DNA of 64,000 nucleotides, taken from Macrostomum lignano. Lineage: Eukaryota. Location: positions 62,001-126,000 of the forward strand of contig NIVC01002245.1 in NCBI GenBank assembly GCA_002269645.1, read 5' to 3'. Position numbers and translations under genes: made by a program. The notes under the pieces are model-generated. The model was not told where the DNA came from, did not search any database, and saw only the letters and a list, made by a program, of their open reading frames with translations. Within the stretch, counting starts at the first letter, position 1; the number at the start of each line of letters is the position of its first letter. Positions 1 to 44,446 of the stretch are shown here, in pieces.

Positions 1-2582
<2,582 letters not shown>

Positions 2583-3020
2583 ATATATACAATCTGTCAT
2601 AATCTACTATAATATAATATAATATAATTTGTATATAAGTTTTATATTATGTTATTGAATAAATTTTTCAACACAATAATTGCATGCTGTTGCCAACTGC
2701 TTAAAGGTTTACCAGATGTGTCCACTTAGCAGTTTTCCTCAGCGCAACCTCTTCATCATTCTCACAAAGAATCAGAGAAGTGCAGGTCACAGCCAAAGTT
2801 TTCCAAGTGCTCACAGATATTCCATGCATCTTGAAAGTTGACAGAGTTTATTTTTGAATAGTATGAAGCGCCATGCAAAGATCGGCAAAGTCTTCAGTCT
2901 CATTGGCATGCAGTGTCAACGAGCTGCCGATAATTACATGTATAAAATGTCTTCATCTTTTATAGGCAGCTGTATGAAGGACAACCCGCAGTCGGCAGAG
3001 CCTCTGAGCCCCGCCGCCGG

Positions 3021-3839
3021 TCACGGCGCCACAGCGCACGACACGCCGATGCTGCCGAGGCTCTGCTGCAGCTGCTGGCCGTCTTCGCCCGTCCGCCTGA
3101 GCTCCAAGAATGGCAGCTCCACCCTGGCCTGTCCCGGACACGGGCACCGGACATCCGGCAGCAGCCTGGGCAGCCTGGCGGCGTCAGCATTGATGAAGAA
3201 CTGAGGCTGCGGCTGAGCTCGGGCCAACTGGCAGCTGACGGGCCGGTAGAGCGCGCCGTGGCGGCCCAGCATGGCGTTGAGGCGGCGCAGGTCGGCGCCA
3301 GTCAGCGGCTCCGGCCGCGGCGGCCTCAGCGGCGGGTGCAGCGCGGCGCAGCCGGTTCCGTGCAGGCGGGTCACCAGACGGAGGCGCTGGACGCCGGCGC
3401 CGCCGCCGCTATCCAGCGGCTCCAGAGACGCCACGGGCAGGCGGGCGTTGCGGCAGCGGAGGTCGGGCCTGAGCTGCTCCTGTTTTGGGCCTGCTGTAAC
3501 TGGGCCTGACAGGCTGCTGGCGCACTGGCAACGCGCCTCGTAGCGCAGTGCCGGCAGCGACTTGCCCGAAGCTCCGAGGCTCTCCCAGGTCGGCGGTGCG
3601 AGCTGCTCCGGGCAGAGGCTCCGCAGGTTCTCCGCAAGCTGGTATTTGCTCTGATCCTCCACGCTGAACCTGCAGCCGGGCGGTCCGTTCATCTCCGAGC
3701 TGCTGTAGTCCACATAGCTCAGTCCGGAGCTCCCGGCGCCCCAGCCGCACGCGGCATTGGACAAGGCGGCGGCGATGGCGGATAGCTCTGCTGCCAGAAG
3801 CAACGCCAGCAGCAATGACAGAATCAGCGGCGGATGCAT
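3021..3839 (-). CDS. Secreted protein with two tandem IL-17/PTTH-trunk-like cystine-knot domains, copy 1 (272 aa, intronless)
   Basis: ATG at 3839 opens a signal peptide (MHPPLILSLLLALLLAAELSAIAAA). Domain 1: RSLCP..SLPALRYEARCQC..RCRNARLPV..RLVTRLHGTGC. Domain 2: VSC..FFINADAARLPRLLPDVRCPC..LPFLELRR..IGVSC. Both resemble the IL-17 RSL(S/C)PW..N.DPNR.P..L.EA.C.C..L..LRR..VGC pattern, but each has only one C-terminal Cys. Confidence 0.65.
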   Translation of the reverse strand: MHPPLILSLLLALLLAAELSAIAAALSNAACGWGAGSSGLSYVDYSSSEMNGPPGCRFSVEDQSKYQLAENLRSLCPEQLAPPTWESLGASGKSLPALRYEARCQCASSLSGPVTAGPKQEQLRPDLRCRNARLPVASLEPLDSGGGAGVQRLRLVTRLHGTGCAALHPPLRPPRPEPLTGADLRRLNAMLGRHGALYRPVSCQLARAQPQPQFFINADAARLPRLLPDVRCPCPGQARVELPFLELRRTGEDGQQLQQSLGSIGVSCAVAP

Positions 3840-4115
3840 CGAGGGTCGACTGTTGCACTTTGAATGATCAACTTTGCCAGAACTGCTGGACTTTTTATTT
3901 GGCTTCCAAGCTGGGCGATTGGACCGGCTGCAGGTGTCGCTATTAATATAAGCTCTGTGCCGCCCCCGGCCCAAAAAAAGTGTGCCGCCTCTGCTTTTGC
4001 TGCCCAACAACAGATTCATTCGTATTCAGAAAAGGAACCGGAATTACTAATTAATGTTAATTTTGATGCTATTTTTAGCTCCTTCGTGGCTTTTGTTTCA
4101 ATTTGCAGCTTCTGT

Positions 4116-5520
4116 TTACAGAATTTCTGATAGCAGCTCGTAGAGGCTTGCTTGCACGTCCCCCCCCCCGAGCTTCTTCACTGGCCAGCATTGGCAAATA
4201 TGCGCTGAAGGGAATTGTAGCATTGTAGCATCGCTGATAATGGGCATGCGGATGCAATGTGCCCTTGCTTTCCGCACTTGTTGCAGACTGCCTGTCTGAA
4301 TCTGCAAGCAGATCTCAGATGCGGCAGATGTATAGTGGCGATGGTTTTCTGAGGATCGGTAGTAACGTGCACGGATTCTGATGCTTCTTGAACGGGAGCC
4401 TTTTGGCTTGAGTTGCTCCAGGATCTTGGCCTTCATTGCTTCGTAGGTGCAGTCATTCGCGCTGATGTCATTAGGCTTCATCAGAGACTCAACTAGTGTA
4501 AGCACGGCAGATCCGCAGGTAGTGAGGAAGACGTCCTTTGTCTGCTCACCTCTGTGTGTCAGGTAGCTTTGAGGTAGAAGGAGAATCCCCTCCGGATATG
4601 CAGTAGCCATGTCTATGAGTTTGAACTCCAACGAAGACCCCATTTGGGAAGCAGGGCTGGCACTCGGGTCAGGAGCTAGCACGCCGGATTCGAGACTGTC
4701 CTCTGATTCTGAAGCCAGACGCTTGGAGGTAAGCATGTGACTGCTGCTGGAGCTGATTAGCTGATCTGATTGATCCTATGAAAACTATTGTCGAGATCGA
4801 ATTGCAGACACTTCCGGGCGCAGGAATCATTTATCCTGTACAAAATCCGATAATTTCATGCCCAATCGTGCCAGTGCTGAAGCCCGAAGGATCTGAAAGG
4901 CCAGTGCGAATATGCAGAGACTACTTAGTGACACTAAATAGACTCATCGATGCAAACTTCCAAACCTAGAGACGCATACCCACGAGCTACAGATAGCACT
5001 GACAGAGCAAGAAGTGATGGATAAGCTTCTTCGTGATATTCCGAATGTCGCTTCGTACCAGGACGATATTATGATCGGAACACCAGGTCTAAAAGAGCAT
5101 CATCGAGTTCTGTCACTGGTAAAGAGCCGATTGGCACAGTACGGCTTCCGAATCAACACCCGTAAATCGCTAAAGTGCAGAGAAAGTGTCAAGTTCCTCG
5201 GATTCATACTTCAAGAAGGTCAACTGTACCCGGATACTGCTAGGATAAAGGCTCTGACTGAGTACCGGAGCCAACGGACAGTGCTAGCTCGTACTTTCCA
5301 AGATCTGTCTTTCTCGCTGGATTGACGTGCAAATTCTCAGCACGCTCGCATCTTCTGTCTTCAAGGCTTGCAGAAAGGCCTTCAAATATGCTGGCTTGCC
5401 GAAGTTTAGTCTCAGACAGCGGAACCAATATGCGATCTGAAATTTTCTACTTTCTTCTTCTGTAACAGAGTTTCACCCACCGACAGAATCTCGACTCAAT
5501 CCTACTGGTTTCACTGAGGC
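4116..5520. mobile_element. Degenerate, rearranged Ty3/Gypsy relic (gag on -, RT and integrase fragments on +)
   Basis: Minus strand: gag-like [35 protein letters not shown] and CCHC knuckle [14 protein letters not shown]. Plus strand: RT PIVPVLKP..VRICRDY and YQDD (5014-5325); integrase GLP..VSDSGTNMRSEIF near 5390-5445. Stops and frameshifts present. Confidence 0.85.
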
Positions 5521-6075: not shown

Positions 6076-6553
6076 AGTCCTAGTATCTCTCCCGCTGTCA
6101 CTCGCATTAGCATTCCAATCACCGGTAGCACTCTTATTGTCTAATTGTCGCTCTGTGTGGGCACTCCTGCAGGCTATTGATACTGATGTCACTCCAATTA
6201 GCACTCGGGGGTTGGTACTCATTGAAAAAGTATCTGAATGAACTATAAAATTAACCCCCTTTCTATGAGAAGTAAGGACGGATGCAACCAGCTAGTTCCA
6301 GAATCCAGAGTCCATATATTGTGTGTCAGAGCTCAGTGAATGTCAGTTTCCCCCAGAATCTCCGTTTAGAACTCCCTGCCCAAGAGATCGCAGGCTCTGG
6401 GCGGCATGTGTTGTCTGCATTTCCCGCAGCCAATGACAGGCTGACATTGCCAGCTGGGGCTGTTCAGCCGAGCCAGATATAAATGGCAGAAATTGTTGGG
6501 AACTGCTCGCGCGGATTCAATTCAATTCACTTCGATTCTGAGTTCTGAAAGAC

Positions 6554-14901
<8,348 letters not shown>

Positions 14902-15204
14902 TGTACATACGCTCGTAGAAGCATGAAAGTGGCTACATGGGAAATTCCATGGAACCCTCAATATCCGCACCTAAGGACACTACCAGTGTTTTTATTGATA
15001 TTGTTTTCCAAAAGCAAAAGTCTTGTTCTAAAAATATATCGAGGTGAAAAATTTGTTATTCAGCTTTATTTATGAGCAAAAATCAAATTAAAACGGCATT
15101 CAACAAGCTTTAGTCTCAGCTGCCCTGTTAAACAATGCATCAGGTTTGTTTGTCAGGACAACGGAAAATGGAAAGGAGGGGTCACAGAGCGAGAGGGCAG
15201 GGAG

Positions 15205-15636
15205 AGGGGAGAGTAGGGAGAGAGTAGGGAGAGAGTAGGGAGAGGTGAGAGTAGGGAGAGAGTAGGGAGAGAGTAGGGAGAGAGTAGGGAGAGGTGAGAG
15301 TAGGGAGAGAGTAGGGAGAGAGTAGGGAGAGAGTAGGGAGAGAGTAGGGAGAGAGTAGGGAGAGAGTAGGGAGAGAGTAGGGAGAGAGTAGGGAGAGAGT
15401 AGGAGAGAGTAGGGAGAGAGTAGGCAGAGAGTAGGGAGAGAGTAGGGAGAGAGTAGGCAGAGAGTAGGCAGAGAGTAGGGAGAGAGTAGGGAGAGAGTAG
15501 GGAGAGAGTAGGGAGAGAGTAGGGAGAGAGTAGGGAGAGAGTAGGGAGAGAGTAGGGAGAGAGTAGGGAGAGAGTAGGGAGAGAGTAGGGAGAGAGTAGG
15601 CAGAGAGTAGGGAGAGAGTAGGGAGAGAGTAGGGAG
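15205..15636. repeat. 11-bp tandem repeat (GAGAGTAGGGA)n
   Basis: Direct reading. Confidence 0.93.
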
Positions 15637-15783
15637 TAGAAGGGAGAGCAGGGGAGAGTGGGAAATGAAGGAAAGCACCGTGAATAATAAATAGATGAAG
15701 AGTTGGGAGATGCTGGGGTGCTGACTGCTGAGCGGTCTACAGGACAGCCCACAGTCGGCAGAGCCTCTGAGCCCCGCCGCCGG

Positions 15784-16557
15784 TCACGGCGCCACAGCGC
15801 ACGACACGCCGATGCTGCCGAGGCTCTGCTGCAGCTGCTGGCCGTCTTCGCCCGTCCGCCTGAGCTCCAAGAATGGCAGCTCCACCCTGGCCTGTCCCGG
15901 ACACGGGCACCGGACATCCGGCAGCAGTCTGGGCAGCCTGGCGGCGTCAGCATTGATGAAGAACTGAGGCTGCGGCTGAGCTCGGGCCAACTGGCAGCTG
16001 ACGGGCCGGTAGAGCGCGCCGTGGCGGCCCAGCATGGCGTTGAGGCGGCGCAGGTCGGCGCCAGTCAGCGGCTCCGGCCGCGGCGGCCTCAGCGGCGGGT
16101 GCAGCGCGGCGCAGCCGGTTCCGTGCAGGCGGGTCACCAGACGGAGGCGCTGACCGCCCGCGCCGCCATCCAGCGGCTCCAGAGACGCCACGGGCAGGCG
16201 GGCGGGACGGCAGCGGGTGCTTGGCCGGCTGCCCCTCCAGCTTAGAGCAGTCGGACAGTGGCAGGTGGATTTGTAGCGCCGGGTTGGCAGCGAGTTGGCC
16301 GGCAGCTGAGTCGTGAGCTCGAATTTGTCGATGCAGACCCGATCGGCATTCTCCGCCAGATTCGGAGAATTTCGCACTCTTTGGCTAAGGTTGCAGTAAA
16401 ATGTAATTGTTAATGTTGTAGTCTTGTAGTTGTCAAATCTCAGGTTCGCGCTCCCGGCGCCCCAGCCGCAGGCAACGTGCTCAGTCTCGGATCTGAGCTG
16501 CTCTGCCTCTAGTAGCAGCAGAAACGACAAAATCGAAGCCAAGCAACTTGGCGACAT
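15784..16557 (-). CDS. Secreted tandem IL-17/PTTH-like cystine-knot protein, copy 2 (257 aa, intronless)
   Basis: ATG at 16557 opens a signal peptide (MSPSCLASILSFLLLLEA). Shares ACGWGAGS and Cys positions with copy 1 (RVCI, SLPTRRYKSTCHC, RCRP). From ARLPVASL onward it is near-identical to copy 1. Confidence 0.65.
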   Translation of the reverse strand: MSPSCLASILSFLLLLEAEQLRSETEHVACGWGAGSANLRFDNYKTTTLTITFYCNLSQRVRNSPNLAENADRVCIDKFELTTQLPANSLPTRRYKSTCHCPTALSWRGSRPSTRCRPARLPVASLEPLDGGAGGQRLRLVTRLHGTGCAALHPPLRPPRPEPLTGADLRRLNAMLGRHGALYRPVSCQLARAQPQPQFFINADAARLPRLLPDVRCPCPGQARVELPFLELRRTGEDGQQLQQSLGSIGVSCAVAP

Positions 16558-18142: not shown

Positions 18143-18369
18143 CCGGCTGAGCTCAATATCGCTACTAATTATTACTGATAACTGATAAAAGGAATGCAAA
18201 ACAGCCTTTGAGTTCGAGTCAAAATACACCCTGACCTCTCTGAACTTTCAACTTTGAACTTGGCCTTGTGTCTTCTGTCTTTATAAATCATGAAGCAAAG
18301 CCGGAAGCATAGTGTAGGGAATGCTGAAGCGTCAAATTCAGAGGTTTAAAAGAAGCCTGTTGAAGTTTC

Positions 18370-18800
18370 GGGAGCTGGGTAAAGTTTCAGGAGCTGTTTG
18401 AAGTGTCAGAAACTGTTTAAAGTGTCAGGAGCTGTTTAAAGTGTCAGGAGCTGTTTGAATTGTCAGGAGCTGTTTGAATTGTCAGGAGCTGTTTGAATTG
18501 TCAGGAGCTGTTTGAAGTGTCAGGAGCTGTTTAAAGTGTCAGGAGCTGTTTAAAGTGTCAGGAGCTGTTTAAAGTGTCAGGAGCTGTTTGAAGTGTCAGG
18601 AGCTGTTTGAATTGTCAGGAGCTGTTTGAATTGTCAGGAGCTGTTTGAAGTGTCAGGAGCTGTTTAAAGTGTCAGGAGCTGTTTGATTTGTCAGGAGCTG
18701 TTTAAAGTGTCAGGAACTGTTTGAAGTGTCAGGAGCTGTTTGAAGTGTAAGGAGCTGTTTAAAGTGTCAGGAGCTGTTTGAGGTGTCAGGAGCTGTTTAG
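18370..18800. repeat. 19-bp tandem repeat (GGAGCTGTTTAAAGTGTCA)n
   Basis: Direct reading. Confidence 0.92.
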
Positions 18801-19524
18801 TGTCAAAAATAGTGCTAGAAACTAGTGTTAGTATCAAAAACAGGTGAAGTAGTCAGGAACAAACAGCCCTAAACCCAACCAGCTGAAATAATTATACACT
18901 GGAAGCAATAAATCATTTCATTAGCGGAATATAGTTTAGCAGACTAATGCTAAGGAGTCAATCAGCCAGAGAGGGCTTTGCATCAAACTGTGGATGACAA
19001 TATTTACTAACGAAAAGGGCTAATTGTTGCTAAAAATAGCATTTTGCACAATTTCTCCTGCAATGTTTTCAATACCCTACTGAATAAGTAGGCTACTAAG
19101 GAATGCGAATGAAAGATTTGACAACGCTAAAAGACATAAAAAGCAGAAATTATATCGAGAAATAAGGCCGAATCGCTGAATCGCTGAAAAGTGTCGGTGG
19201 CACTTTTTATAAATATAAGGCTATCAATTTCCTCTGAAGGCAGCCCATAGGTGCGAAATACATGTTATAAACTTATAGGATAAAACCGCATAGTAGATAG
19301 AAAAACACAGAAGATGCAGAAAACCTTTCTATAAAATCTAAGAAAATAGATTTAAATTTTAATATTAACAAAAGGAATAACGCCGCACAGACAGCTGTCA
19401 CATTGCTTTTGTACAGAAATTCGCTAATTTACAACGGAAATGTCAAAATCGAAACGCCAATGTGAATTTTAGATTATAGTTCTAAAAACGTATGGTATCT
19501 TCTGTTCAACCCTTGTTTAATACT

Positions 19525-20005: not shown

Positions 20006-23405
<3,400 letters not shown>

Positions 23406-23991
23406 TCTGAAAGGGTCGAGTCTAGATCAGACGCTACTTTAAATTTTAAAGAAAAATCTATTGTCTTTTATTACTGCATCATTGTTCAACAGTTTCACTG
23501 CGAATCTGCTGCGTCAAGTTAAAAATGCTAGATTAGATTATTCGATGTTTATAATTATAAAACATTAAAAAGGGCCGTTAAAATACAAGTCAAATATAAA
23601 GAACCAAACTAAACATAAATGATTTATTTTAGCTTTCAGCTTACTAGCTTGTAAAAAAACTACATCGAAATAAAACCAGTGGTACATACATTTTAATATT
23701 TTGTTAATGATAGTGTTTGGCTATTAAATATTGTTTTAATGCATCCAAACACTGACAAACCCTTTACTTTACACGGCGCCGTCATGCCCTGTAATCGTGA
23801 AGTTCATCAATCTGACCGTCTTCCTATTCTCTCTATAATATTAACATACATGTACGTAAACGTGCACATGTAAATGAAATGTTATTTAATAAATTTTGTA
23901 AACGTTACTTAATATTTAAATTTTCAGGCACTCAAAGAATCTATAGGGCTCGGAAATTTGCCAGTAATAGCTAGATAGGTTATCCACGAGG

Positions 23992-24275: not shown

Positions 24276-25618
24276 CGAGGGGCATTCAAAAAGTTTTGGC
24301 AACTGACCTAATATCTCCAAAAGTACACCATATACCACAAAGCGTTGAAATTTTTTTTACGAAATCGCAGACATATATTGGTTTTAACCATAGAGTATGA
24401 CTTTTTCCCCCTCGAATGTGTTATACTTGCGCGTGGCCAACGCAATTGGTGGTGTTTTACACTCTGCCAAAAATGGAGCCAGTGCAACCAGACCAGTGGC
24501 GATTCTACGTTTTCATGCACTCACGACTCGGAGAAAGCGCGGTCAAAATCCATGCAAACCTTGGTCCAGGTAGTCGGGGACCAAGCCCCTTCCTATCGCA
24601 CGGTCGCCAGGTGGATAGAGTTTATCAACGCCGGACGGGCCTCCTTGAACGACGACCCCCGGTCTGGAAGACCCAGCACAGCTGTGACCGAAGCCAACAT
24701 CGCTGCTGTCAGGGCTCTGGTGGACGAGGATCCAAACATTACCGTCGCTGTGATTAGCGAGACTATCGGTATTTCCGATGGCAGTGCGCACACCATCCTG
24801 CACAGCCACCTGGGCCTCCGCAAGGTCGCCCGCTGGGTGCCTCACCTCCTGACAGAAGAGCAGAAGAGGGAGAGGGTGCGGTGCAGCCAGGAATTGCTGC
24901 GCAACTTCGGTCCAAGAGGCAGCCAGAGGCTTTCCGACGTCGTTACATGTGATGAGAAATGGTTTTTTTATTTTCAAGTGCCCCAGAAGATGCAGAACAA
25001 GGCCTGGGTGGGCTCTGGAGACGCGAGGCCGACTGTCCTGCGGTCCAGCTTTCGGTCCCGGAAGGAGATGTTCGTCATCTTCATCAGCACATCTGGGCCC
25101 GTGGCCGTCATCATGGTGCCTAATGGACAGAATGTGAACGCCAGCTTCTACTCCGGTACGGTTCTGCCACAAGTCATGGCGTCACTTCACGCAACTCAGC
25201 CCTCACGGCTTCAAGCTGGTGGGCGAGTTCACCTGCACCATGACAATGCGTCCAGTCACACAGCGGCCCTGACGACCAACTTTCTGGCAGTTAAAAACAT
25301 CAAGACTATCCGCCACCCACCCTACAGTCCTGACTTGGCTCCCTGCGACTTCTGGGTGTTCGCCAAGCTGACTGAACGGCTGGCAGGACGGAATTTTCAC
25401 CGATGCCAGGACCTGGCTAAGTGCATCAATTCAGAGCTGAAGGCCATACCTGCTTCTGAGTACCATGGCGCATTCGAAGCATGGATTCGGCAGCACCAAA
25501 AGTGCATTGAGAGAGGGGGAGACTACATTGAAGGATTGTAACATGTTCAGTTGTTCTTTGCAGTTACTGTTTTTTGATAGTTGACCATGAGTTGCCAAAA
25601 CTTTTTGGGTGCCCCTCG
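24276..25618 (+). mobile_element. Full-length mariner DNA transposon (DD34D), 1343 bp
   Basis: TA TSD on both sides; about 29-bp TIRs CGAGGGGCA(TT/CC)CAAAAAGTTTTGGCAACT; WVPHLL, TCDEKW, HHDNA and YSPDLAPCD with 34 residues between the second and third Asp. Confidence 0.95.
24473..25541 (+). pseudogene. Mariner transposase with one +1 frameshift near 24560
   Basis: The ATG at 24473 (MEPVQPDQWRFYVFMHSRLGESAVKIHANL) is out of frame with LVQVVGDQAPSYRTVARW..YIEGL; one extra base in GCAAACCTTGGTC. Confidence 0.75.
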
Positions 25619-26778
25619 TACAATAGAGGCCAACAAGTGGATCAATGCAGCAAACGAAGAATTACATATGCACATGTAAGAAAGATTGTACATGTAAGTT
25701 CGCCCAGCTCCCCCTCCCCATGTATAGCCAGGTAAATTCAACTATAATTTAACTTACGTACATATACTACTGTACGTACATATACATAACCTTTATGTAA
25801 CGGCAGCTAGCTATTTTTTATGTGTATACATGTACCTGTATAGTATTATTACAACACACTTAACATTGCTCGAATATCGAAACCATCCATTATTGAATTA
25901 TAGCCTCTTGGAGTATGCAGGTGCATGTAAATTCTGCCGCTAAACTCACACACGTATACTGATCCAAACGAAGCTATGTGCAGAACTGAGAGTTCAAAAT
26001 GTTTTGAACCTTAATGTACACAAAACAGCGATAAAGTACGTATGCGTGTGAGATATGCAGCGCAGCCCAAGTTCTGGTTCGCATGAAATGTAAAGTCTGA
26101 AATGAAATGCAAAGACTTACATGTAAATGTACGCTCGTATGCCTCCACACGAGCAAAAGTGTCCAGCAAAATTGGATTGGATATTGGTCTATTGACCAAT
26201 AATTGACCATGTTATTGACCACATATATGTATATAGTACATGTAATTATTACACCAATTCTGATAGATGACTTCGATCTACATGTACATAAAGACCTGCG
26301 CGCTCCTTCACCACGCGTCACTCGACACCTGCATGTATAGCACCTATTTTATAAGAGTTAGATTGCTCACTGTACATGTACATGTCTTTCAAGAGTACCA
26401 AGAGTACTACCCCCTTACATCCTCTAAGAAAATAAAGAAACAATTAGCAAGAAAAATTTGCACAAAGAGGAAAATTAATTGATTTCGATCGTAATTAGCT
26501 TAATAGCTTAATCTGTTCGTTGTTTTTCGACAACGGAGTATATAACTTATGAACAATTGGTACCTTGAATTGTGTGCATAAATTAGCTGATTCATTAATA
26601 GACCAGCAATTCAGCGCACTTAGAAAGTTTTAGATAACGAGTACTTGCATGCACTAATTTCTAGTAAAGCAAGCTTGAGTTCAAAAAGTTTCAGAGTTCA
26701 AAGTTCGTCCTACGTGTAGAACTGACAGTAAATAAATATTCTTTCTATTACACTTTTTAACTTTAAAGATGACGTTTT

Positions 26779-27892
26779 TTAGACCACCTGCAGCATCATC
26801 CGCATCGCACGGAAGGCCTTGTAGCTTCCAATGCAATACGAGGCCATGTAGGAGGAACCGGGTTGAGTACACACCGTTCGGGTTGATCCTCAAGCAGCTG
26901 CTCCACCAGAAGCCGCCGCACCCATATTTGGTGCTGCAGCTGTAAGAATAAGCGTCGTTGTCCCTGTCGAAGGTGGAGAACTGACTGCCTCGATGGTGAG
27001 ACAAAAAGTCGCAGTTGATGGTGGAGTTGGCGCTGAGAAAGCTGCCGTAGTTCATCCTGTAGTTCGTACTGGAATTCCCAACGGTGAAGCCGAGCCACTC
27101 GAACGTGTAAAACTCTCCGTCGAAAGTCAGGATCTCGATTCGCAGGTTTCTGGGGCTGGTCATGGTCATATTGTGGATGCTTTCGAGGCCTGAAATGAAG
27201 GAACAACGATTGACTTGAGCCGCTTTCTTGCCAGCAGTAATACAAGATATACAAAAAGCAAAAACATTACAAATGCTCGTGTGTTTCATCAGGGCTTGAA
27301 CTCTCTCGAGTCCAATTTGAACTCACCAATCCAAAACTCGGTGGCAGTTCCAAACCCGCTGGCAAAGTCACCCCAGGTCCTATTGAAGGTAACTTCTCCA
27401 GACTGTCGCTGCTGGAACACCCAGAATGTCCGGCTATCAATCTGCTGCTGGTATCCGGGACTTTTGACCGGAAAGACTGGAGTTGGTAAGACGCACGGCA
27501 TTATGGAGGGCATGCGTGCTGTTTAATGGTATTTGATTTTACGCTTAAATGCATGAAGATAATTGAAAAGGTAATCAATGGACATGTAACTATAGCTAGC
27601 TGGAAGATCACCAACTGGTTTAATATTAATATAATGTTAATTGTAGTACTAATGAAATAAATGAACATGAGCGGAAACTTACAAACAACCTCTCGCTTCC
27701 GGTATATAAAACCACACCTCCGGATCCGGCACAATCGGCTTTGCTGGACAGAACGCAGACTCCGTTGATGAAGCTGAACGACAGCCAGCCGATGGCCAGA
27801 GCGCATTTCATTGCGCATTCGATTTCACCTCGAGCGCTCACCAGGACAGTACGTGGAGCTAGCAGTACAGGTGGACGTCCCGACAACAGCAT
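26779..27892 (-). CDS. Fibrinogen-related domain (FReD) protein with N-terminal PAN/apple-like segment; frameshift near the C-terminus; 5' end unresolved
   Basis: PAN-like GEIECAMKC..SFSFINGVCVL (27892-about 27685). Exon 27518-27327 VFQQRQSGEVTFNRTWGDFASGFG..EFWIG. Exon 27189-26779 GLESIHNMT..LRIE..FSTFDRDND..C..GGFWWSSC..NPNG. A 1-nt shift near 26860 restores YKAFRAMRMMLQVV*. The PAN-exon junction phase is not resolved. Confidence 0.8.
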
Positions 27893-29146: not shown

Positions 29147-29389
29147 TGTGGCGGCCAGACTGGTGCACGGTTGAGAGCGGGGCCCGCCTGTGCACAGGCC
29201 CCTGCACGCCTGGCTGCTGGGGAGTTTTGCACAGCCAGCCAGTTCGCTCTGACTCTCACCTCCCTATTCTCTCAAGTATAAAGACTATGCTTAAACAAAT
29301 ATACACAAGATCTTTTGCTCGCTTGCTGCTTTTCAAGCTTCCACTCGCAAGCCGCTTCATTGGTGAGCCCTACGCAGCCATTTCGTGCA

Positions 29390-30100
29390 ATGGCCCAACA
29401 AACCGACTCTGCTGTGTCCCTGAAGCTGCCCACGTTTTGGGCGGCCCAGCCTCGAGCCTGGTTCATCCAGGCCGAAGCTCAGTTTACCCTGAGAGGCATC
29501 ACTCAGGACGAGACCAAGTACGCCCATCTGGTCGCAGCTCTTGACCAGCAGACAGCAGAGCGCCTGCTCGATGTGCTCGAGGCTCCTCCGGAGGCGAACA
29601 AGTACTCTCAGCTAAAGGAGCGCCTCAACAGCACTTTCGATTTGACTCCTCAGCAGCGGGCCAGTCGCCTGCTCAGCATGTCCGGCCTCGGCGAACGGCG
29701 GCCTTCCGAGCTGATGGACGAGATGCTCGCCCTGCTGGGGAACCACCGCCCCTGCCTGCTGTTCGATGAGCTGTTCCGCCAGCAGCTGCCACCGGAAGTA
29801 CGCATGGCCATGACAACCGTCAGTTTCGCGGACCCCCGGGCAGCAGCGCAGGAGGCAGACAAGCTCTGGGCCAGCCGGCCGCAGCTGGTGGCGGCTTCCG
29901 TCCAGCAGCCGGCGGCAGACCCAGCCCAGCAAGCCCAGCCGGCAGTCTTTGCGGCCAGCAAGGGCGCCAGACAGAGACGGCCCCAGCAGCACCGCCAGGA
30001 CGACGGCCTGTGTTTCTTTCACCGTCGTTTCGGTGCGAAAGCCCGCCGCTGTGAACTCCCGTGCAGCTTCCAGGGAAACGGGCAGGCCGGCCGTCAGTGA
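29390..30100 (+). CDS. gag: Gypsy gag
   Basis: [51 protein letters not shown]; C-terminal [18 protein letters not shown]. Confidence 0.9.
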
Positions 30101-30117
30101 ACAGCTCGACGGCCGGC
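30073..30117 (+). promoter_or_regulatory. -1 programmed ribosomal frameshift signal
   Basis: Slippery G GGA AAC (30073-30079) in gag frame; 6-nt spacer; perfect 10-bp stem GCCGGCCGTC (30086-30095) / GACGGCCGGC (30108-30117); pol is in the -1 frame. Confidence 0.85.
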
Positions 30118-33100
30118 AACACCAGCAGCCTGCTCCTCATCCCGGATGTGCAGACGGGCCGGCGTTTCCTGGTCGACACCGGCGCCGAGGTCAGCATTTT
30201 CCCCGTCGCCGGTTCCGACGCCCGCCTGCACTCGCCAGGCCCGCCGCTTTTCGCAGCCAACGGCAGCCTCATCCGAACCCTCGGCACCCGCCAGCTCACG
30301 TTGGACCTCGGCATCCGGCGCTGCTCCTGGCCGTTCCTTCTGGCCGAGGTCTCCCACCCGCTGATCGGCGCCGACTTTCTGCGGCACCACGGCCTGCTGG
30401 TGGACCTGCCGCACCGGCGCCTCCTGGACGCCCGCTCGCTCGCCAGCGTGCACCTGCTGGACGGCGCGGGGCCCGGACTGCAACTCGCCCAGCCGCCGCT
30501 GCGGACCCGTACAGCCAGCTGTTGGCCGAGCTCCCCGCCCTCACCGAGCCCAGTTTCCAGCGGGCTGAGCCACGACACGGGGTGGAGCACCCCGTCCCGA
30601 CGCAGGGCCCGCCGGTCCATGCCCGCCCTCGCCGCCTGCCGCCGGACAAGCTGGCGGTGGCCAAGGAGGAGTTCCGGCTCCTGGAGCAACTCGGCATCGT
30701 TCGCCGGTCCAACAGCCCTTGGTCCTCGCCGTTGCATATGGTCCCAAAAGCCTCCGGTGGCTGGCGGCCCTGCGGCGATTTCAGGCGGCTAAACGACGCC
30801 ACGGTGCCCGACCGCTACCCGGTGCCGCACATCCAGGACTTCTCAGTGCGCCTAGCCGGCTGCTCGGTTTTCTCCAAGATCGACCTGGTTCGTGGCTACC
30901 ACCAGGTGCCCGTGGCCGCAGCCGACGTGCCCAAGACCGCCGTTACCACCCCGTTCGGCCTCTTCGAGTTCTTGCGAATGCCATTCGGTCTCAAGAATGC
31001 CGCCCAGGCCTTCCAGCGGTTGGTGGACTCCGTCTGCCAAGACCTGGACTTTGTCTTCGCCTACATAGACGACTTCCTGGTCGCTAGCCGCAGCCCGCAG
31101 CAGCACCTGGAGCACTTGCGGACGCTTTTCCAGCGCCTGATGGACAACGGCCTTATCGTCAACCCGGCCAAGTGCGAGTTCGGCCGCAGCGAGATCGACT
31201 TCCTCGGCCACCGGAACAGCGCCCAGGGAGCCGTGCCGCTGCCCGCCAAAGTCGACGCCATCGCCAGATTCGCACCGCCAGCCACCGTCAAGGGCCTGCA
31301 GGAGTTCGCCGGCATGGTGAATTTCTACCACCGCTTCGTGCCGCGCGCCGCCCAGCTGCTGCGCCCCATCCATGCGGCCATGGCCGGCAAGGAGAAGTTC
31401 GTCCGGTGGACGCCCGAGCTGACCGCCGCTTTCGATGGAGCGAAGCGGGCGCTGGCCTCCGCCGCCATGCTGGCGCACCCGCGGCCAGACGCGCCCATCG
31501 CCCTCACCGTCGACGCCTCCGATACCGCGGTCGGGGCAGCGCTCGAGCAGCGGGTTGGCAGCGCCTGGCAGCCGCTCGCCTTCTTCAGCCGGCAGCTGCG
31601 CCCGCCCGAGCAGAAGTACAGCGCGTTCGACCGCGAGCTGCTCGCCCTGTACCTGGCGGTGCGGCACTTCCGCTATTTCCTGGAGGGCCGCGCGTTCACC
31701 GCTTTCACGGACCACAAGCCGCTGGTCGCCGCCATGTCCAAGATGTCGGACCCGTGGTCCGCCCGACAGCAGCGCCACCTGGCCTACGTGTCCGAGTTCA
31801 CCACGGACATCCAGCACGTGCGGGCAAGGACAACTCGGTCGCAGACGCGCTGTCCCGCTGCACGGTCTCTTCCGTGCAGCCCCGGCTGCTCCCTGGCGTG
31901 GATTTCGCGTCCATGGCCCAGGCGCAGGCGGCCGATACGGCCAGTCAGGCGGACGCCAGCCTCCAACTTGAGCCGCTGCAGCTCAGCCCCGGTGTCGCCC
32001 TGCTCTGCGACATCTCCACAGGCCGGCCGCGCCCGTTGGTGCCGCCGAATTTCAGACGCCCCGTCTTCGACACCATCCACGGCCTCGCCCACCCGTCCGT
32101 CCGCAGCACGCGGCGCCTCGTGGCCGCCAAGTTCGTGTGGGCCGGCATGAACAAGGACGTTAGCCGGTGGGCCCGGTCCTGTGTCGCCTGCCAGACGGCC
32201 AAGGTGCACCGGCACGTCGCCGCCCCGGTTGGCAATATCCGCGTCTCGGACCAGCGCTTCGCCCACGTGCACGTCGACCTGGTGGGGCCGCTTCCGCCTT
32301 CGCAAGGTTTCACGCACTTGCTGACCATCTTGGACCGTTTCACCCGGTGGCCGGAGGCGATCCCGATGACCGACACCTCCGCGGCCGCGTGCGCCTCCGC
32401 CTTCATCGCCCACTGGATCGCCAGGTTTGGAGTGCCAAGCGACAGCACCTCGGACCGCGGCTCGCAGTTCACGTCGCTGCTGTGGTCCAACGTCTCATGG
32501 CTCCTCGGAATGCAGCTCCACCGGACAACGGCTTTCCATCCGCAGGCGAACAGGCTGGTCGAGCGTTTCCACCGGCAGCTGAAGTCCTCCCTCATGACGC
32601 GACTGGCCGGACCAGCCTGGGTTAGCGAGCTACCCTGGGTGCTGCTCGGCATCCGGACGGCCCCCAAGGAGGACCTGCCGGCATCGTCGGCCGAGCTGGT
32701 CTACGGAGCGCCCCTCTGCGTGCCTGGCGAGTGCCTGCAGTTCAGCCCGCCGGCCGGCGACTACGAACAGTTCCTCGCCCGGCTCCGCGGCGCCGTCCAG
32801 GCATTCCGGCCGACGCCGACGTCCCGTCACGGCAGCCGCCCCACAGCTTGGCCGGCCGCCCTCGACGCCTGCCAGTTCGTTTTCGTCCGGCGCGACGGCC
32901 ACCGCCCTCCGCTGCAGCGACCTTACGACGGCCCGTTCAAGGTCCTCGAGCGGGACGCCAAAGCTTTCCTGCTGGACCTGGGCACTCGACGCGACCGAGT
33001 GTCAGTGGAGAGACTGAAGCCAGCCGTCATCGACGCGGTCGACCCGTTCCCGACGCCGGCCCTGCGACCGAGAGGCCGCCCGCCGCGGCTGCCCGCTGAG

Positions 33101-33200
33101 CCGCCCAGCGCACTCTGCCGCCGACCCCGCCTCTTCAGCTGGCGACTTTCCGCCGGCGGCCCAACGCACTGCTGCTTTCCCCAGCCGCCAATTGCCACCC
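30073..33200 (+). CDS. pol: Gypsy pol (PR-RT-RH-IN), reached by -1 frameshift, with two further 1-nt frameshifts (about 30485 and 31822); 3' end approximate
   Basis: LVDTGAEVS protease; RT YIDD; RNase [16 protein letters not shown]; integrase HHCC (HGLAH..CVAC) and VHVDL/SDRG/VERF; GPFKV. Confidence 0.9.
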
Positions 33201-33955
33201 CGCCGGTGCTGTCCGAGCCCGGCGGCCTTGGCCGAATAGCTCGGTGCTGGGGGGAGCTCTGTGGCGGCCAGACTGGTGCACGGTTGAGAGCGGGGCCCGC
33301 CTGTGCACAGGCCCCTGCACGCCTGGCTGCTGGGGAGTTTTGCCCAGCCAGCCAGTTCGCTCTGACTCACACCTCCCTATTCTCTCAAGTATAAAGACTA
33401 TGCTTAAACAAATATACACAAGATCTTTTGCTCGCTTGCTGCTTTTCAAGCTTCCACTCGCAAGCCGCTTCAGTGTGAGCACTGAGTGAGCTGAGAGTGA
33501 AGGACTGTCAGAGACCGTGAATGCATGCTTTTTAAAAGGTTCTGTGTTTCAATTTTACAATTCATATTGATGACGTGTTTATGTTTTTAATTCCCTCCGT
33601 TATTTTACCTGTTTCGCGGGTGGGGCGAGGTAGAAATGTACTGGTTTTATTCCATGCCTTATTGGCAGTTACTGAACTTGTATCATTGAACTATGACAAA
33701 TACTTTGCTGAATAATTGTACCGCTTTTAATGTACGATTGTACGTTCGCTCTCTATGTACATCGTTGACTCGCATATAGCCAGCACGCCTCACAGGGCCT
33801 TCGAATTGATTTTTGCACTGCCAAATACCGCGCGTTACAAAATGACAAACAATAATACTAATAGCATACTAGGCCTAAATACTATTAAAATTCACAATAT
33901 CACAAAATCACAATATCCAGTTAGACAAATTGCCCCAGTCACAATATCCAACTAA

Positions 33956-39490: not shown

Positions 39491-39657
39491 TTAGAAAAAT
39501 TCAAATTTCAATTTGTAAACATGGAGTCTGCAGACTTCTGCAACTTCTGTGGTTCAGAGAGGCTTTCAATTTGGTATCTTAAGTTTGAACTCAAGACACA
39601 GATAGCCTTATTGCAATTACAATTGTCTCAGTTTTTCCATTTGATTCAGAGTCTGCT

Positions 39658-42650: not shown

Positions 42651-42814
42651 GCATGCCGGTTTTATGTTTTTAAAGTATTTTATCGAGTTCTTCATGTACT
42701 TTTAAGCCTTAGTAGATTTTTCAGGTTAGAAATTATTTTTTTGTAATTGTCTCTAATGCGATTATTGCCTCTGCTTTGTGCCATTATGATATTTCTGCTT
42801 GATGTCTGCAAATA

Positions 42815-43722
42815 AGGGGACAAACAGTCCCAGAGATAAGAGGACAAACAGTCCCAGAGATAAGGGGATAAACAGTCCCAGAGATAAGGGGACAAACAGT
42901 CCCAGAGATAAGGGGACAAACAGTCCCAGAGATAAGGGGACAAACAGTCCCAGAGATAAGGGGACAAACAGTCCCAGAGATAAGGGGACAAACAGTCCCA
43001 GAGATAAGGGGATAAACAGTCCCAGAGATAAGGGGACAAACAGTCCCAGAGATAAGGGGACAAACAGTCCCAGAGATAAGGGGACAAACAGTCCCAGAGA
43101 TAAGGGGATAAACAGTCCCAGAGATAAGGGGACAAACAGTCCCAGAGATAAGGGGACAAACAGTCCCAGAGATAAGGGGATAAACAGTCCCAGAGATAAG
43201 GGGACAAACAGTCCCAGAGATAAGGGGACAAACAGTCCCAGAGATAAGGGGACAAACAGTCCCAGAGATAAGGGGACAAGAGTCCCAGAGATAAAGGGAC
43301 AAACAGTTCCAGAGATAAGGGGATAAACAGTGCCAGAGATAAGGGGACAAACAGTGCCAGAGATAAGGGGACAAACAGTCCCAGAGATAAGGGGACAAAC
43401 AGTCCCAGAGATAAGGGGACAAACAGTCCCAGAGATAAGGGGACAAACAGTCCCAGAGATAAGGGGATAAACAGTCCCAGAGATAAGGGGACAAACAGTC
43501 CCAGAGATAAGGGGACAAACAGTCCCAGAGATAAGGGGACAAACAGTCCCAGAGATAAGGGGACAAACAGTCCCAGAGATAAGGGGACAAACAGTCCCAG
43601 AGATAAGGGGACAAACAGTCCCAGAGATAAGGGGACAAACAGTCCCAGAGATAAGGGGACAAACAGTCCCAGAGATAAGGGGACAAACAGTCCCAGAGAT
43701 AAGGGGACAAACAGTCCCAGAG
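42815..43722. repeat. 24-bp tandem repeat with an internal palindrome, about 38 units
   Basis: GGGACAAACAGTCCCAGAGATAAG. Confidence 0.95.
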
Positions 43723-44446
43723 ATTAAGTAATAAGCAGTGCAGTAGTTGCGGCCAAGTATCCTGATTACTGATGCGACATCGCATTAATTTATATAATCT
43801 TTGCAGGCTCCTTTTGTTCATGTACTTTTTCTAAAAACACGAGAATAGCGTGAACTGCTGATTAATTACGTCACCGATAAGAAGTTAAACTACTGCCAGT
43901 ACTGTGTGCGGATATCTAATTAAATTTAGAATCCAACAATTATATACTATGCAGTGCAACATAATTTTGATTTCCTACGACAAGCATTTGTGTTGTTTAT
44001 TGCTTGATTATCGAGTTTCGCCGACCAACCCGAATATAGATTTATTAATATTTTGTGGCACCTTACTGTTCCAAGTGCCTGGCGTACAGTGAAGTACACG
44101 GGCATTACAGCGGCGCTGTGCATACAAATTGCCGAGCAAAGGGCTTTGCCCGCCCTCTGGCCAAATCACGCAGCCGCAGGCGGTTTGCAGCAGCTGCTGA
44201 TTTTATTTTATTCTGTTTAAACTACAAATATTATAGAATGAGAAGTGGAGGGAATGTGTGGGAGGGTGGCGGCTGAGTAAGCGGTTGCCATGCTCCAGTG
44301 AGCACTGTTTGTTTACTCTGGCCGACAAGTCAACGGTTTTGGCAAACACGCTGACGCAGCAGGTGGGGGGCTTTTATATTGGGCTGAGCCGCGGCGAGAG
44401 CTGGGCAGCTGCTCATCTGTGCTGGCTGAGAAACTGCCATCAAAGC

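What the first reader, a model, noticed from the sequence alone, without database searches (positions are those of the whole stretch)
3021..3839. Single-chain ligand with two tandem cystine-knot-like domains and an atypical Cys pattern
Seen: both ligands carry two IL-17/PTTH-like repeats (SLP..RYEARCQC..C..LPV..TGC and INADAARLPRLLPDVRCPC..LELRR..VSC) joined by a Pro-rich linker (PPLRPPRPEP). Each repeat ends in one Cys rather than the IL-17 CxC. Established: IL-17s act as dimers. Inference: this may be a covalently fused pseudo-heterodimer or a divergent IL-17/PTTH/trunk-like family.
Basis: partly seen in the sequence, partly recalled or inferred. Interest (0 to 1): 0.7.

Follow-up and report, generated by a model that had tools for sequence, protein, structure and literature searches.

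The report
Flatworm gene pair encoding tandem IL-17-like domains
Two neighbouring, unannotated, intronless genes in the flatworm Macrostomum lignano each encode a secreted protein made of two very divergent interleukin-17-like domains in one chain, which may be a naturally fused version of a cytokine that normally works as a two-chain dimer.

Summary
Window 3021-3839 (-) is a 272-aa ORF with a signal-peptide-like start and 11 Cys. A paralog lies at 15784-16557 (-). The window is Macrostomum lignano contig NIVC01002245.1:62001-126000.

Standard searches find almost nothing. Pfam gives IL17 only at E=0.1-0.2, below threshold. A search of 1.84 billion representative proteins found no real relative.

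A purpose-built IL-17 profile from 60 published sequences hits both halves separately:
- Each half scores 11-15 bits, and 0-2 of 20,000 shuffles reach that.
- hhalign gives 89% probability for half 2 and 80% for half 1 of gene 1, the latter over the full domain.
- Among 810 six-frame ORFs of the window, only these two score.

The "atypical" Cys pattern (CxC, no GC, one terminal Cys) is not unique. It matches 6 of the 60 family members, including C. elegans F25D1.3 and two Lottia proteins.

No PTTH, trunk, noggin or spaetzle profile matched.

The fused pseudo-dimer idea remains untested: AlphaFold2 gave pLDDT 32 and 53, and Foldseek found nothing significant.

Verdict: probably a real, fast-evolving, single-chain tandem IL-17-like ligand. 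That would be a new variant of a known family. Expression and fold are unproven.

The parts
3021..3839 (-). Gene 1 coding sequence, intronless, 272 aa plus stop; 11 Cys at residues 31, 56, 76, 104, 106, 129, 164, 203, 232, 234, 268
   Evidence: ORF list and translation. GC by codon position is 0.70/0.56/0.84, the same ordering as known host exons in the window.
3759..3839 (-). Signal-peptide-like N-terminus (MHPPLILSLLLALLLAAELSAIAAALS), residues 1 to about 27
   Evidence: By inspection of the sequence. It was predicted as a helix in the AlphaFold2 model. No dedicated signal-peptide predictor was available.
3330..3626 (-). IL-17-like domain 1 of gene 1, residues 72-170: RSLCPE..LPALRYEARCQC..C129..LPVASLEPL..GTGC164
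   Evidence: hhalign against 24 IL-17 domains gives probability 80.2%, P=1.4e-5, covering columns 1-85 of 86. The HMM scores 11.7 bits and 0 of 20,000 shuffles reach it. The Pfam IL17 sub-threshold hit falls at residues 93-111.
3249..3329 (-). Linker, residues 171-197: a Pro-rich stretch (LRPPRPEP) followed by a predicted helix (GADLRRLNAML). The PEP..DL..L..ML part resembles the C-x-EP..[DE]L..L motif at the N-terminus of many invertebrate IL-17 precursors.
   Evidence: Sequence. A helix at residues 181-191 has pLDDT of about 58-71 in the second AlphaFold2 model. The motif comparison was made by eye with the sequences and is inference only.
3024..3248 (-). IL-17-like domain 2 of gene 1, residues 198-272: VSC203..FFINADAARLPRLLPDVRC232PC234..VELPFLELRR..IGVSC268AVAP. 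The loop between the CxC and the next strand is short.
   Evidence: hhalign probability 88.9%, P=2.4e-6. The HMM scores 14.5 bits and 0 of 20,000 shuffles reach it. MAFFT placed all 18 PF06083 proteins on this half in the expected register.
15784..16557 (-). Gene 2 coding sequence, a 257-aa paralog with the same two-domain layout. Domain 1 is about 16087-16347 and domain 2 is 15787-16011.
   Evidence: tblastn gives 65% identity over the full length. The HMM scores 19.9 bits for the whole protein. Its domain 1 alone is weaker: hhalign 14%, P=0.0019.
2978..3459 (.). Recently homogenised block covering codons 127-272 plus 43 nt of 3' flank, 97% identical to 15741-16216. Upstream of it the two genes no longer align as DNA.
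   Evidence: blastn. In the coding part of the block, 3 codons differ synonymously, 2 non-synonymously, and there is one in-frame 6-nt indel.
1402..2591 (.). Second duplicated block downstream of gene 1, 96.7% identical to 13506-14694 downstream of gene 2. It is part of the same duplication or conversion unit. It is GC-rich, runs into a (GTCT)n array, and has no Pfam match.
   Evidence: blastn, the repeat finder D8, Pfam.
3941..3950 (-). TATA-like TATATTAATA, 102-111 nt upstream of the ATG of gene 1
   Evidence: Read directly from the sequence. This is a consensus match only.
2847..2852 (-). AATAAA polyadenylation-signal-like hexamer, about 170 nt downstream of the stop codon of gene 1
   Evidence: Read directly from the sequence. 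This is a consensus match only.

Best explanation
The window carries two tandemly arranged, intronless paralogous genes of Macrostomum lignano. Each encodes a secreted protein of about 250 aa after signal-peptide removal. Each protein has two highly divergent IL-17-type cystine-knot-like domains in a single chain. Domain 1 is preceded by an N-terminal region with two Cys. Domain 2 is preceded by a Pro-rich segment and a short helix.

**Shown here**
- The ORFs, their paralogy and their coding-like evolution.
- A separate IL-17 profile match for each half.
- A Cys pattern in which each domain keeps one of the two strand-2/strand-4 disulfides of IL-17. The pairings are from my recollection of the IL-17F crystal structure. 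Both Cys of the other disulfide are lost together, as in nematode and limpet IL-17s.

**Inferred**
- The gene arose by in-frame fusion of two neighbouring IL-17 genes, with the second losing its leader.
- The two domains pack against each other as the two protomers of an IL-17 dimer do. This would give an obligate asymmetric single-chain ligand.
- That ligand would engage IL-17-receptor-type (SEFIR) receptors.
- The 3' half of the two genes was recently homogenised by gene conversion or unequal crossing-over, while the 5' halves have diverged to 31% identity.
For: **Source.**: the window is 100% identical to NIVC01002245.1 of assembly GCA_002269645.1.

**Gene reality**
- The N-terminal halves are 31% identical (E=5e-17) with all six Cys kept, while the DNA is unalignable.
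- Identity by codon position is 0.48/0.56/0.40.
- GC3 > GC1 > GC2, as in host exons.
- dN/dS is about 0.4-0.5.
- The only indel in the conserved block is in frame.
- TATA-like and AATAAA motifs flank gene 1.

**IL-17 homology**
- IL17 is the only Pfam family hit.
- My own 60-sequence IL-17 HMM scores 20.3 and 19.9 bits for the two proteins (P about 4e-8). The halves score 11.4-14.5 bits.
- 0 of 20,000 shuffles reach the observed score for four of the five queries, and 2 of 20,000 for gene 2 domain 1.
- Among 810 window ORFs only these two score, at E=5e-5. The next best is E=0.28.
- hhalign gives 89% and 80%.
- MAFFT places 18 PF06083 proteins on domain 2 in register.

**Cys pattern.** The CC-C- pattern is shared with 6 of the 60 family members.
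Against: - The Pfam IL17 score (12-13 bits) is well below the gathering score of 24.
- No relative was found among 5.8 billion clustered or 1.84 billion representative proteins.
- The exact products are not on record as called genes, even though a neighbouring gene of the same contig is. There is therefore no annotation or transcript support here.
- AlphaFold2 models are low confidence: pLDDT 32 and 53. Foldseek gave no significant match.
- Domain 1 of gene 2 matches weakly: 14%, P=0.0019.
- Direct half-versus-half similarity is marginal.
- Domain 2 lacks the usual loop and the partner Cys for C203.
- The mature chain has an odd number of Cys (11).
- Whether M. lignano has an IL-17 receptor was not tested.
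- The junction between the domains lies in the recently homogenised block, so the fused layout is in effect seen once, not twice independently.
Confidence: 0.62

Rival explanations
1. The gene is real, but only the C-terminal domain is IL-17-like. The N-terminal half is an unrelated Cys-rich pro-region, as many IL-17 precursors have long variable N-terminal parts.
For: Domain 1 evidence is weaker than domain 2 evidence. hhalign gives 80% for gene 1 but only 14% for gene 2. Direct half-versus-half similarity is marginal: E=0.19 and P=0.044.
Against: Half 1 aligns to the IL-17 profile over the whole domain, columns 1-85, with RSLCP, LP....EARCxC, the mid-domain Cys and the terminal GC all in register. 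The Pfam sub-threshold hit is in half 1. Its HMM scores are 11.7 and 11.4 bits, reached by 0 and 2 of 20,000 shuffles.
Confidence: 0.12
2. The ORFs are not functional genes. They would be decaying or never-expressed relics, or chance ORFs, in GC-rich duplicated DNA of a very repeat-rich genome.
For: They are not in the gene set on record for this contig. No relatives exist in the large protein libraries. The GC-rich region has long ORFs in several frames. dN/dS of 0.4-0.5 indicates only mild constraint.
Against: Two copies whose 5' halves diverged beyond DNA alignment both keep an open frame, a hydrophobic leader and all six Cys. The codon-position GC matches host exons. No other ORF of the window matches the IL-17 profile.
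Confidence: 0.12
3. It is a lineage-specific secreted Cys-rich protein unrelated to IL-17, for example a rapidly evolving reproductive or adhesive secretion. Its IL-17-like motifs would then be convergent or coincidental.
For: All sequence scores are below curated thresholds. The structure prediction is inconclusive. The IL-17 hypothesis was suggested by the same sequence that was then tested.
Against: Two separate segments hit the same profile in the same order of motifs. The Cys positions coincide with a known family sub-pattern. Analytic P is about 4e-8 for the whole protein, which still gives about 1e-3 after correction for about 25,000 families.
Confidence: 0.08
4. It is a polyprotein precursor. 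The chain would be cut in the linker and release two separate IL-17-like monomers that then associate as a conventional two-chain heterodimer.
For: The linker holds a minimal R-x-x-R motif (RPPR, residues 172-175) and a dibasic RR (185-186).
Against: There is no full R-x-[KR]-R site. The residue after RPPR is Pro, which is unfavourable for furin-type cleavage (my own knowledge). Nothing was tested here.
Confidence: 0.06

Closest known systems
IL-17 family (Pfam PF06083), specifically the members with one strand-2/strand-4 disulfide: C. elegans F25D1.3 (ILC-17.1), T22H6.1 and C44B12.6, C. briggsae CBG09631, and Lottia gigantea 169526 and 159302
   Same: It has a signal peptide. It has the motif R/L-P-x4-[ED]-[AV]-[RK]-C-x-C. 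The GC Cys and the second Cys of the terminal CxC are absent (pattern CC-C-). Domain 1 has a mid-domain Cys before strand 3. It has the VLRR-like strand and the terminal G-x-C.
   Different: There are two such domains in one chain. Domain 2 has a much shorter loop after the CxC and no mid-domain Cys. The CPW motif is degenerate (CPE in domain 1, SCQ in domain 2). Scores are below the Pfam threshold.
Sea-urchin gene models with several IL-17 domains (S. purpuratus SPU_019350.1 with three and SPU_022838.1 with two; PMC4517768)
   Same: More than one IL-17 domain in one predicted protein.
   Different: In those models each unit starts with its own hydrophobic leader-like segment, and the inner units lack the terminal Cys motif (sequences). 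They therefore look like merged neighbouring genes. Here a single uninterrupted ORF carries two complete domains and only one leader.
Vertebrate IL-17A/IL-17F heterodimer
   Same: One ligand built from two different IL-17 protomers. This is what a fused two-domain chain would mimic (inference).
   Different: The vertebrate protomers are products of separate genes, joined after translation. Each protomer keeps both knot disulfides.
PTTH / Trunk, Noggin, Spaetzle / NGF-type cystine-knot ligands
   Same: Secreted Cys-rich ligands with long beta-hairpins.
   Different: None of these families matched either half in Pfam, even at E<=10.

Membership tests
IL-17 (Pfam PF06083) | Score at or above the curated Pfam gathering threshold (24 bits) | tested here: not met
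   12.4 bits (E=0.22) for the 272-aa protein and 13.4 bits (E=0.1) for the longer ORF. The halves alone gave no hit.
IL-17 (Pfam PF06083) | Profile similarity over the whole domain for each half | tested here: met
   hhalign against 24 IL-17 domains: domain 2 gives 88.9% (P=2.4e-6) and gene 1 domain 1 gives 80.2% (P=1.4e-5, columns 1-85 of 86). Gene 2 domain 1 gives only 14%. My own HMM scores 11.4-14.5 bits per half, and 0-2 of 20,000 shuffles reach that.
IL-17 (Pfam PF06083) | Motif 1 of PMC4517768: DPNR[IYF]Pxx[IL]xEA[RK]C | tested here: met
   Domain 1 has SLPALRYEARC. Domain 2 has INADAARLPRLLPDVRC (I, N, D, R, P, L, R and C in register).
IL-17 (Pfam PF06083) | Four Cys forming two disulfides between strands 2 and 4 (C-x4-C ... 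C-x-C) | tested here: not met
   Each domain has only the first Cys of each pair (pattern CC-C-). The same reduced pattern occurs in 6 of the 60 accepted family members, and C--C- occurs in 2 more. The feature is therefore not universal in the family.
IL-17 (Pfam PF06083) | Invertebrate-type third disulfide (the Cys of CPW plus a Cys before strand 3) | tested here: inconclusive
   Domain 1 has both positions, C76 in RSLCPE and C129. Domain 2 has C203 but no partner in the expected place. The pairing itself is not testable here.
IL-17 (Pfam PF06083) | Secreted: N-terminal signal peptide | tested here: met
   Both paralogs have hydrophobic leaders, judged by inspection. No predictor was available.
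IL-17 (Pfam PF06083) | IL-17 fold (two long beta-hairpins tied at one end) | tested here: inconclusive
   AlphaFold2 gave pLDDT 32 with 2 sequences and 53 with 20 sequences. Only the last hairpin of domain 2 reaches 78-87. The best Foldseek E-value is 3.2. IL-17A and IL-17F appear only for a 33-residue hairpin.
IL-17 (Pfam PF06083) | Dimeric ligand that signals through SEFIR-domain IL-17 receptors | not testable with these tools
   There is no receptor gene in the window.
PTTH/Trunk, Noggin, Spaetzle/NGF cystine-knot families | A match to the family profile | tested here: not met
   Pfam at E<=10 returned only IL17 for the whole proteins and nothing for the halves.

The most novel reading that the evidence does not exclude
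This would be a natural single-chain IL-17. Two different IL-17 domains would be hard-wired by gene fusion into one obligate asymmetric pseudo-heterodimer. It would occur in a phylum (Platyhelminthes) for which the literature I could search reports no IL-17 ligand. The domain that stays identical between the two paralogs could provide a constant receptor-binding face, and the fast-diverging domain a variable one.
Probability: 0.3. Interest if true: 0.7.

Novelty: new variant of a known kind. Interest (0 to 1): 0.5.

Why it matters
**If the reading is right**
- It places IL-17-type ligands in free-living flatworms. The two surveys of invertebrate IL-17 that I read do not cover this group, and my literature searches found nothing.
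- It gives a natural example of a dimeric cystine-knot cytokine converted into a single chain. That is useful for understanding how asymmetric IL-17 ligands engage two receptor chains. It is also a template for engineered single-chain IL-17s.
- It shows that such genes escape both genome annotation and standard domain searches. IL-17 repertoires in divergent phyla may therefore be underestimated.

**If the reading is wrong**
It is one more lineage-specific secreted Cys-rich ORF of unknown role.

Tried and rejected
1. The word-indexed protein search with the 272-aa protein gave no hit at E<=0.01.
2. Exhaustive HMMER of the two-paralog profile against 1.84 billion representatives gave one hit, P0001 at E=3.5e-4. 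P0001 is a 1934-aa highly repetitive protein. It also collects sub-threshold hits to a dozen unrelated Pfam families. I rejected the hit as inflated by repeats.
3. A PDB sequence search returned only an irrelevant transcription regulator at E=0.45.
4. Pfam on the separate halves gave nothing.
5. BLASTP of half 1 against half 2 gave only an 8-residue match, E=0.19.
6. AlphaFold2 with the two paralogs only gave pLDDT 32. With 18 added PF06083 proteins it gave pLDDT 53, with no confident domain packing. Foldseek against the PDB was not significant. In any case the IL-17 hits on the hairpin are not independent of the alignment that was supplied.
7. Exact-sequence look-ups of both products in public assemblies found nothing on record.
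8. The cluster look-up for P0001 timed out.
9. The IL-17F crystal-structure paper I wanted to cite for the disulfide pairing is not held. The pairing is quoted from memory.
10. The last word-indexed search with an IL-17 alignment returned only 18 proteins, none from a flatworm.
11. The longer 332-aa reading from the ATG at 4019 was rejected. The extension has no counterpart in the paralog, and the TATA-like motif lies inside it.

Full report
**What is in the sequence**

Window 3021-3839 on the minus strand is an uninterrupted ORF of 272 codons plus stop. It starts with a hydrophobic leader, MHPPLILSLLLALLLAAELSAIAAALS. It has 11 Cys, at residues 31, 56, 76, 104, 106, 129, 164, 203, 232, 234 and 268.

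This includes the Pro-rich PPLRPPRPEP between the two repeats.

tblastn of the protein against the window finds one paralog. It is an ORF at 15784-16557 (-), 257 aa from its ATG.

**Where it comes from**

A neighbouring multi-exon gene, an FAD-dependent oxidoreductase at 39.6-42.7 kb, is 99% identical to BOX15_Mlig003772g1 of Macrostomum lignano. The contig that carries that gene is NIVC01002245.1 of assembly GCA_002269645.1. It is 100% identical to window 29652-52650. The window is therefore positions 62001-126000 of that contig, from a free-living flatworm.

The rest of the window fits an animal genome that is very rich in repeats:
- a forkhead gene;
- a G-alpha gene;
- a fibrinogen-related ORF;
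- a Tc1/mariner-type transposase;
- an LTR-retrotransposon pol;
- many micro- and minisatellite arrays.

**Is it a gene?**

Evidence for:
- The two copies share near-identical DNA only for 2978-3459 versus 15741-16216 (97%). That covers codons 127-272 and 43 nt beyond the stop. A second block downstream, 1402-2591 versus 13506-14694, is 96.7% identical.
- Upstream of codon 127 the DNA no longer aligns. The proteins are still 31% identical (BLASTP E=5e-17), with all six Cys, GWGAG, LAEN and SLP..RY..C.C conserved.
- Identity by codon position there is 0.48/0.56/0.40.
- GC by codon position in gene 1 is 0.70/0.56/0.84, the same ordering as host exons in the window.
- dN/dS is about 0.4-0.5 in both parts.
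- The only indel in the near-identical block is 6 nt and in frame.
- A TATA-like TATATTAATA lies about 105 nt upstream of the ATG of gene 1. An AATAAA lies about 170 nt downstream of its stop.

Evidence against:
- The exact products are not on record as called genes, although the neighbouring oxidoreductase of the same contig is.
- No protein in the large libraries resembles them.

I conclude that these are most likely real, fast-evolving, unannotated genes. Transcription has not been shown.

**Are the halves IL-17-like?**

Standard tools say almost nothing:
- Pfam gives IL17 (PF06083) as the only family, at 12-13 bits (E=0.1-0.2) against a threshold of 24. The hit is in the first half.
- The halves alone give nothing.
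- The PDB sequence search gives nothing relevant.

I therefore took the IL-17 protein sequences published in the S1 Dataset of PMC4517768. I aligned the domain of 60 of them and built an HMM. Results:

| Test | Query | Result |
|---|---|---|
| HMM | gene 1 protein | 20.3 bits, P=3.9e-8 for one comparison |
| HMM | gene 2 protein | 19.9 bits |
| HMM | gene 1 half 1 (residues 61-172) | 11.7 bits |
| HMM | half 2 (residues 191-272) | 14.5 bits |
| HMM | gene 2 half 1 | 11.4 bits |
| 20,000 shuffles of each query | all but gene 2 half 1 | 0 reach the observed score |
| 20,000 shuffles | gene 2 half 1 | 2 reach the observed score |
| Reversed sequences | all | about 0 bits |
| HMM against all 810 six-frame ORFs (>=35 aa) of the window | the two ORFs | E=5e-5; next best E=0.28 |
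| hhalign against 24 diverse IL-17 domains | half 2 | 88.9%, P=2.4e-6 |
| hhalign | gene 1 half 1 | 80.2%, P=1.4e-5, columns 1-85 of 86 |
| hhalign | gene 2 half 1 | 14%, P=0.0019 |

The window-ORF scan is a control with the same genome composition.

MAFFT, given 18 PF06083 proteins from the last library search, placed all of them on half 2 in the expected register. R, P and the first knot Cys were invariant.

By BLASTP they are not significantly similar. Their relatedness is best seen through the family profile.

**Motifs and cysteines**

Against the three motifs that PMC4517768 defines for the family:
- It reads VELPFLELRR, compared with VP[IV]YQxILVLR[RK].
- It reads IGVSCAV, compared with [VI][APT]V[GA]CTC[VA].
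- Domain 1 reads RSLCPE (family: RSxCPW), LPALRYEARCQC, a Cys (C129) just before LPVASLEPL, and GTGCAAL.

In both domains, two Cys are missing together: the GC Cys and the second Cys of the terminal CxC. In the IL-17F crystal structure, as I recall it, these two Cys form one of the two disulfides between strands 2 and 4. I could not check this because the paper is not held. The loss is therefore a coordinated loss of one disulfide.

This pattern is not new for the family. In the 60-sequence alignment, 6 members have it: C. briggsae CBG09631, C. elegans F25D1.3, T22H6.1 and C44B12.6, and Lottia 169526 and 159302. Two more have C--C-. The "atypical Cys pattern" is a known minority pattern.

The mature chain has 11 Cys, an odd number. 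One Cys is therefore free or makes an inter-chain bond. This is unresolved.

**Architecture and history**

- Half 1 looks like a complete precursor: leader, an N-terminal region with two Cys, then the domain.
- Half 2 is a domain preceded by LRPPRPEP and a predicted helix, GADLRRLNAML.
- By eye, the PEP..DL..L..ML stretch resembles the C-x-EP..[DE]L..L motif that begins many invertebrate IL-17 precursors. That suggests the second unit kept its pro-region but lost its leader. This is inference.
- IL-17 genes commonly sit in tandem arrays in invertebrates (PMC8353272). In-frame fusion of two neighbours is therefore a simple origin.
- The two present genes are old paralogs, with 5' halves at 31% identity. 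Their 3' 145 codons and about 2 kb downstream were recently homogenised to about 97% identity.
- A consequence is that the junction of the two domains is in effect observed once, not twice independently.

**Structure**

AlphaFold2 with only the two paralogs failed (pLDDT 32). With the 18 family members added it reached pLDDT 53. Only the last hairpin of domain 2 was confident (78-87). There was no confident packing of the domains. Foldseek against the PDB gave no significant match (best E=3.2). IL-17A and IL-17F appeared only for that 33-residue hairpin, and this is not independent of the supplied alignment. The pseudo-dimer idea is therefore neither supported nor refuted.

**Most likely mechanism**

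After leader removal, the cell would secrete one chain with two different IL-17-type domains. IL-17 cytokines act as dimers, which is established knowledge. The simplest reading is that the two domains pair within the chain as two protomers do. The linker of about 27 residues (171-197) would bridge the end of domain 1 and the start of domain 2. The result would be an obligate asymmetric ligand for IL-17-receptor-type receptors. All of this is inferred.

Alternatives:
- The chain is cut in the linker (minimal RPPR motif) to give two chains.
- Only domain 2 is a true IL-17 domain.
- The ORFs are not expressed.
- The resemblance is coincidental.

My confidence figures for these are given with the rival explanations.

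**Comparison with what is known, and novelty**

The closest known proteins are the one-disulfide IL-17s of nematodes and limpets. Predicted proteins with two or three IL-17 domains have been listed for the sea urchin (SPU_022838.1, SPU_019350.1). Their sequences show a leader-like segment at the start of each unit and truncated inner units. They look like merged neighbouring genes.

The two invertebrate IL-17 surveys I read do not mention flatworms as carriers of IL-17. Four literature searches found no flatworm IL-17.

I rate this as a new variant of a known kind: a divergent member of the IL-17 family with a single-chain two-domain layout. It fails the curated Pfam threshold and the canonical four-Cys criterion. 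Formal membership therefore rests on profile-profile evidence and on the existence of accepted members with the same Cys pattern.

Noticed in passing
window 231-1300, 1897-2600, 13600-15000, 20900-22200: Very long (GTCT)n/(CAGA)n-type microsatellite arrays recur across the window. They create long spurious ORFs (CLSV.../TDRQ... repeats) in several frames.
   Followed up: partly
window 6520-8900, 9018-9800, 11834-13300, 15100-15680, 18275-18894, 42787-43830: Minisatellite arrays with periods of 14, 16, 9, about 21, 19 and about 21-24 nt. Together with the microsatellites they occupy a large share of the first 20 kb.
   Followed up: no
window 1402-2591 and 13506-14694: A duplicated GC-rich block lies downstream of both IL-17-like genes (96.7% identical). 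It has ORFs of 200 aa or more on both strands and no Pfam match. It is unclear whether it is a gene, a UTR or a repeat.
   Followed up: partly
window 39589-42700 (+): An FAD-dependent oxidoreductase (DAO family, TDA3-like; BOX15_Mlig003772g1). In the search, its closest relatives outside M. lignano are mostly green algae, plants and metagenome proteins (about 46% identity). Only one animal, the copepod Tigriopus, is named among the listed hits.
   Followed up: no
window 29282-33391 (+): A GC-rich (about 69%) LTR-retrotransposon-type gag/pol region with RT, RNase H and integrase domains. The pol reading frame is split between two overlapping frames. It was not analysed further.
   Followed up: no
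window 24312-25538 (+): A Tc1/mariner-type transposase ORF of about 400 aa with HTH and DDE_3 domains. It appears intact.
   Followed up: no
window 26684-27322 (-): An ORF with a fibrinogen C-terminal domain (E=1.5e-22), that is, a fibrinogen-related protein exon. It lies about 10 kb from the second IL-17-like gene.
   Followed up: no
window 20873-23426 (-): A forkhead-domain gene whose domain is split by an intron. By eye it looks FoxJ2/3-like. It has a long poly-Gln tract and a microsatellite inside the large downstream ORF.
   Followed up: no
window 4116-5325: Fragments of a retroelement sit immediately upstream of gene 1: a zinc-knuckle gag-like ORF on the minus strand and RT-like ORFs on the plus strand.
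   Followed up: no
protein P0001 (library hit, not in the window): A 1934-aa repeat protein whose unit PEPLSVTDLARVRDRLGRWGALGEELSSC resembles the linker PEPLTGADLRRLNAMLGRHGALYRPVSC of the IL-17-like genes. I judged this a repeat-inflated chance hit, but its origin could not be looked up because the query timed out.
   Followed up: partly
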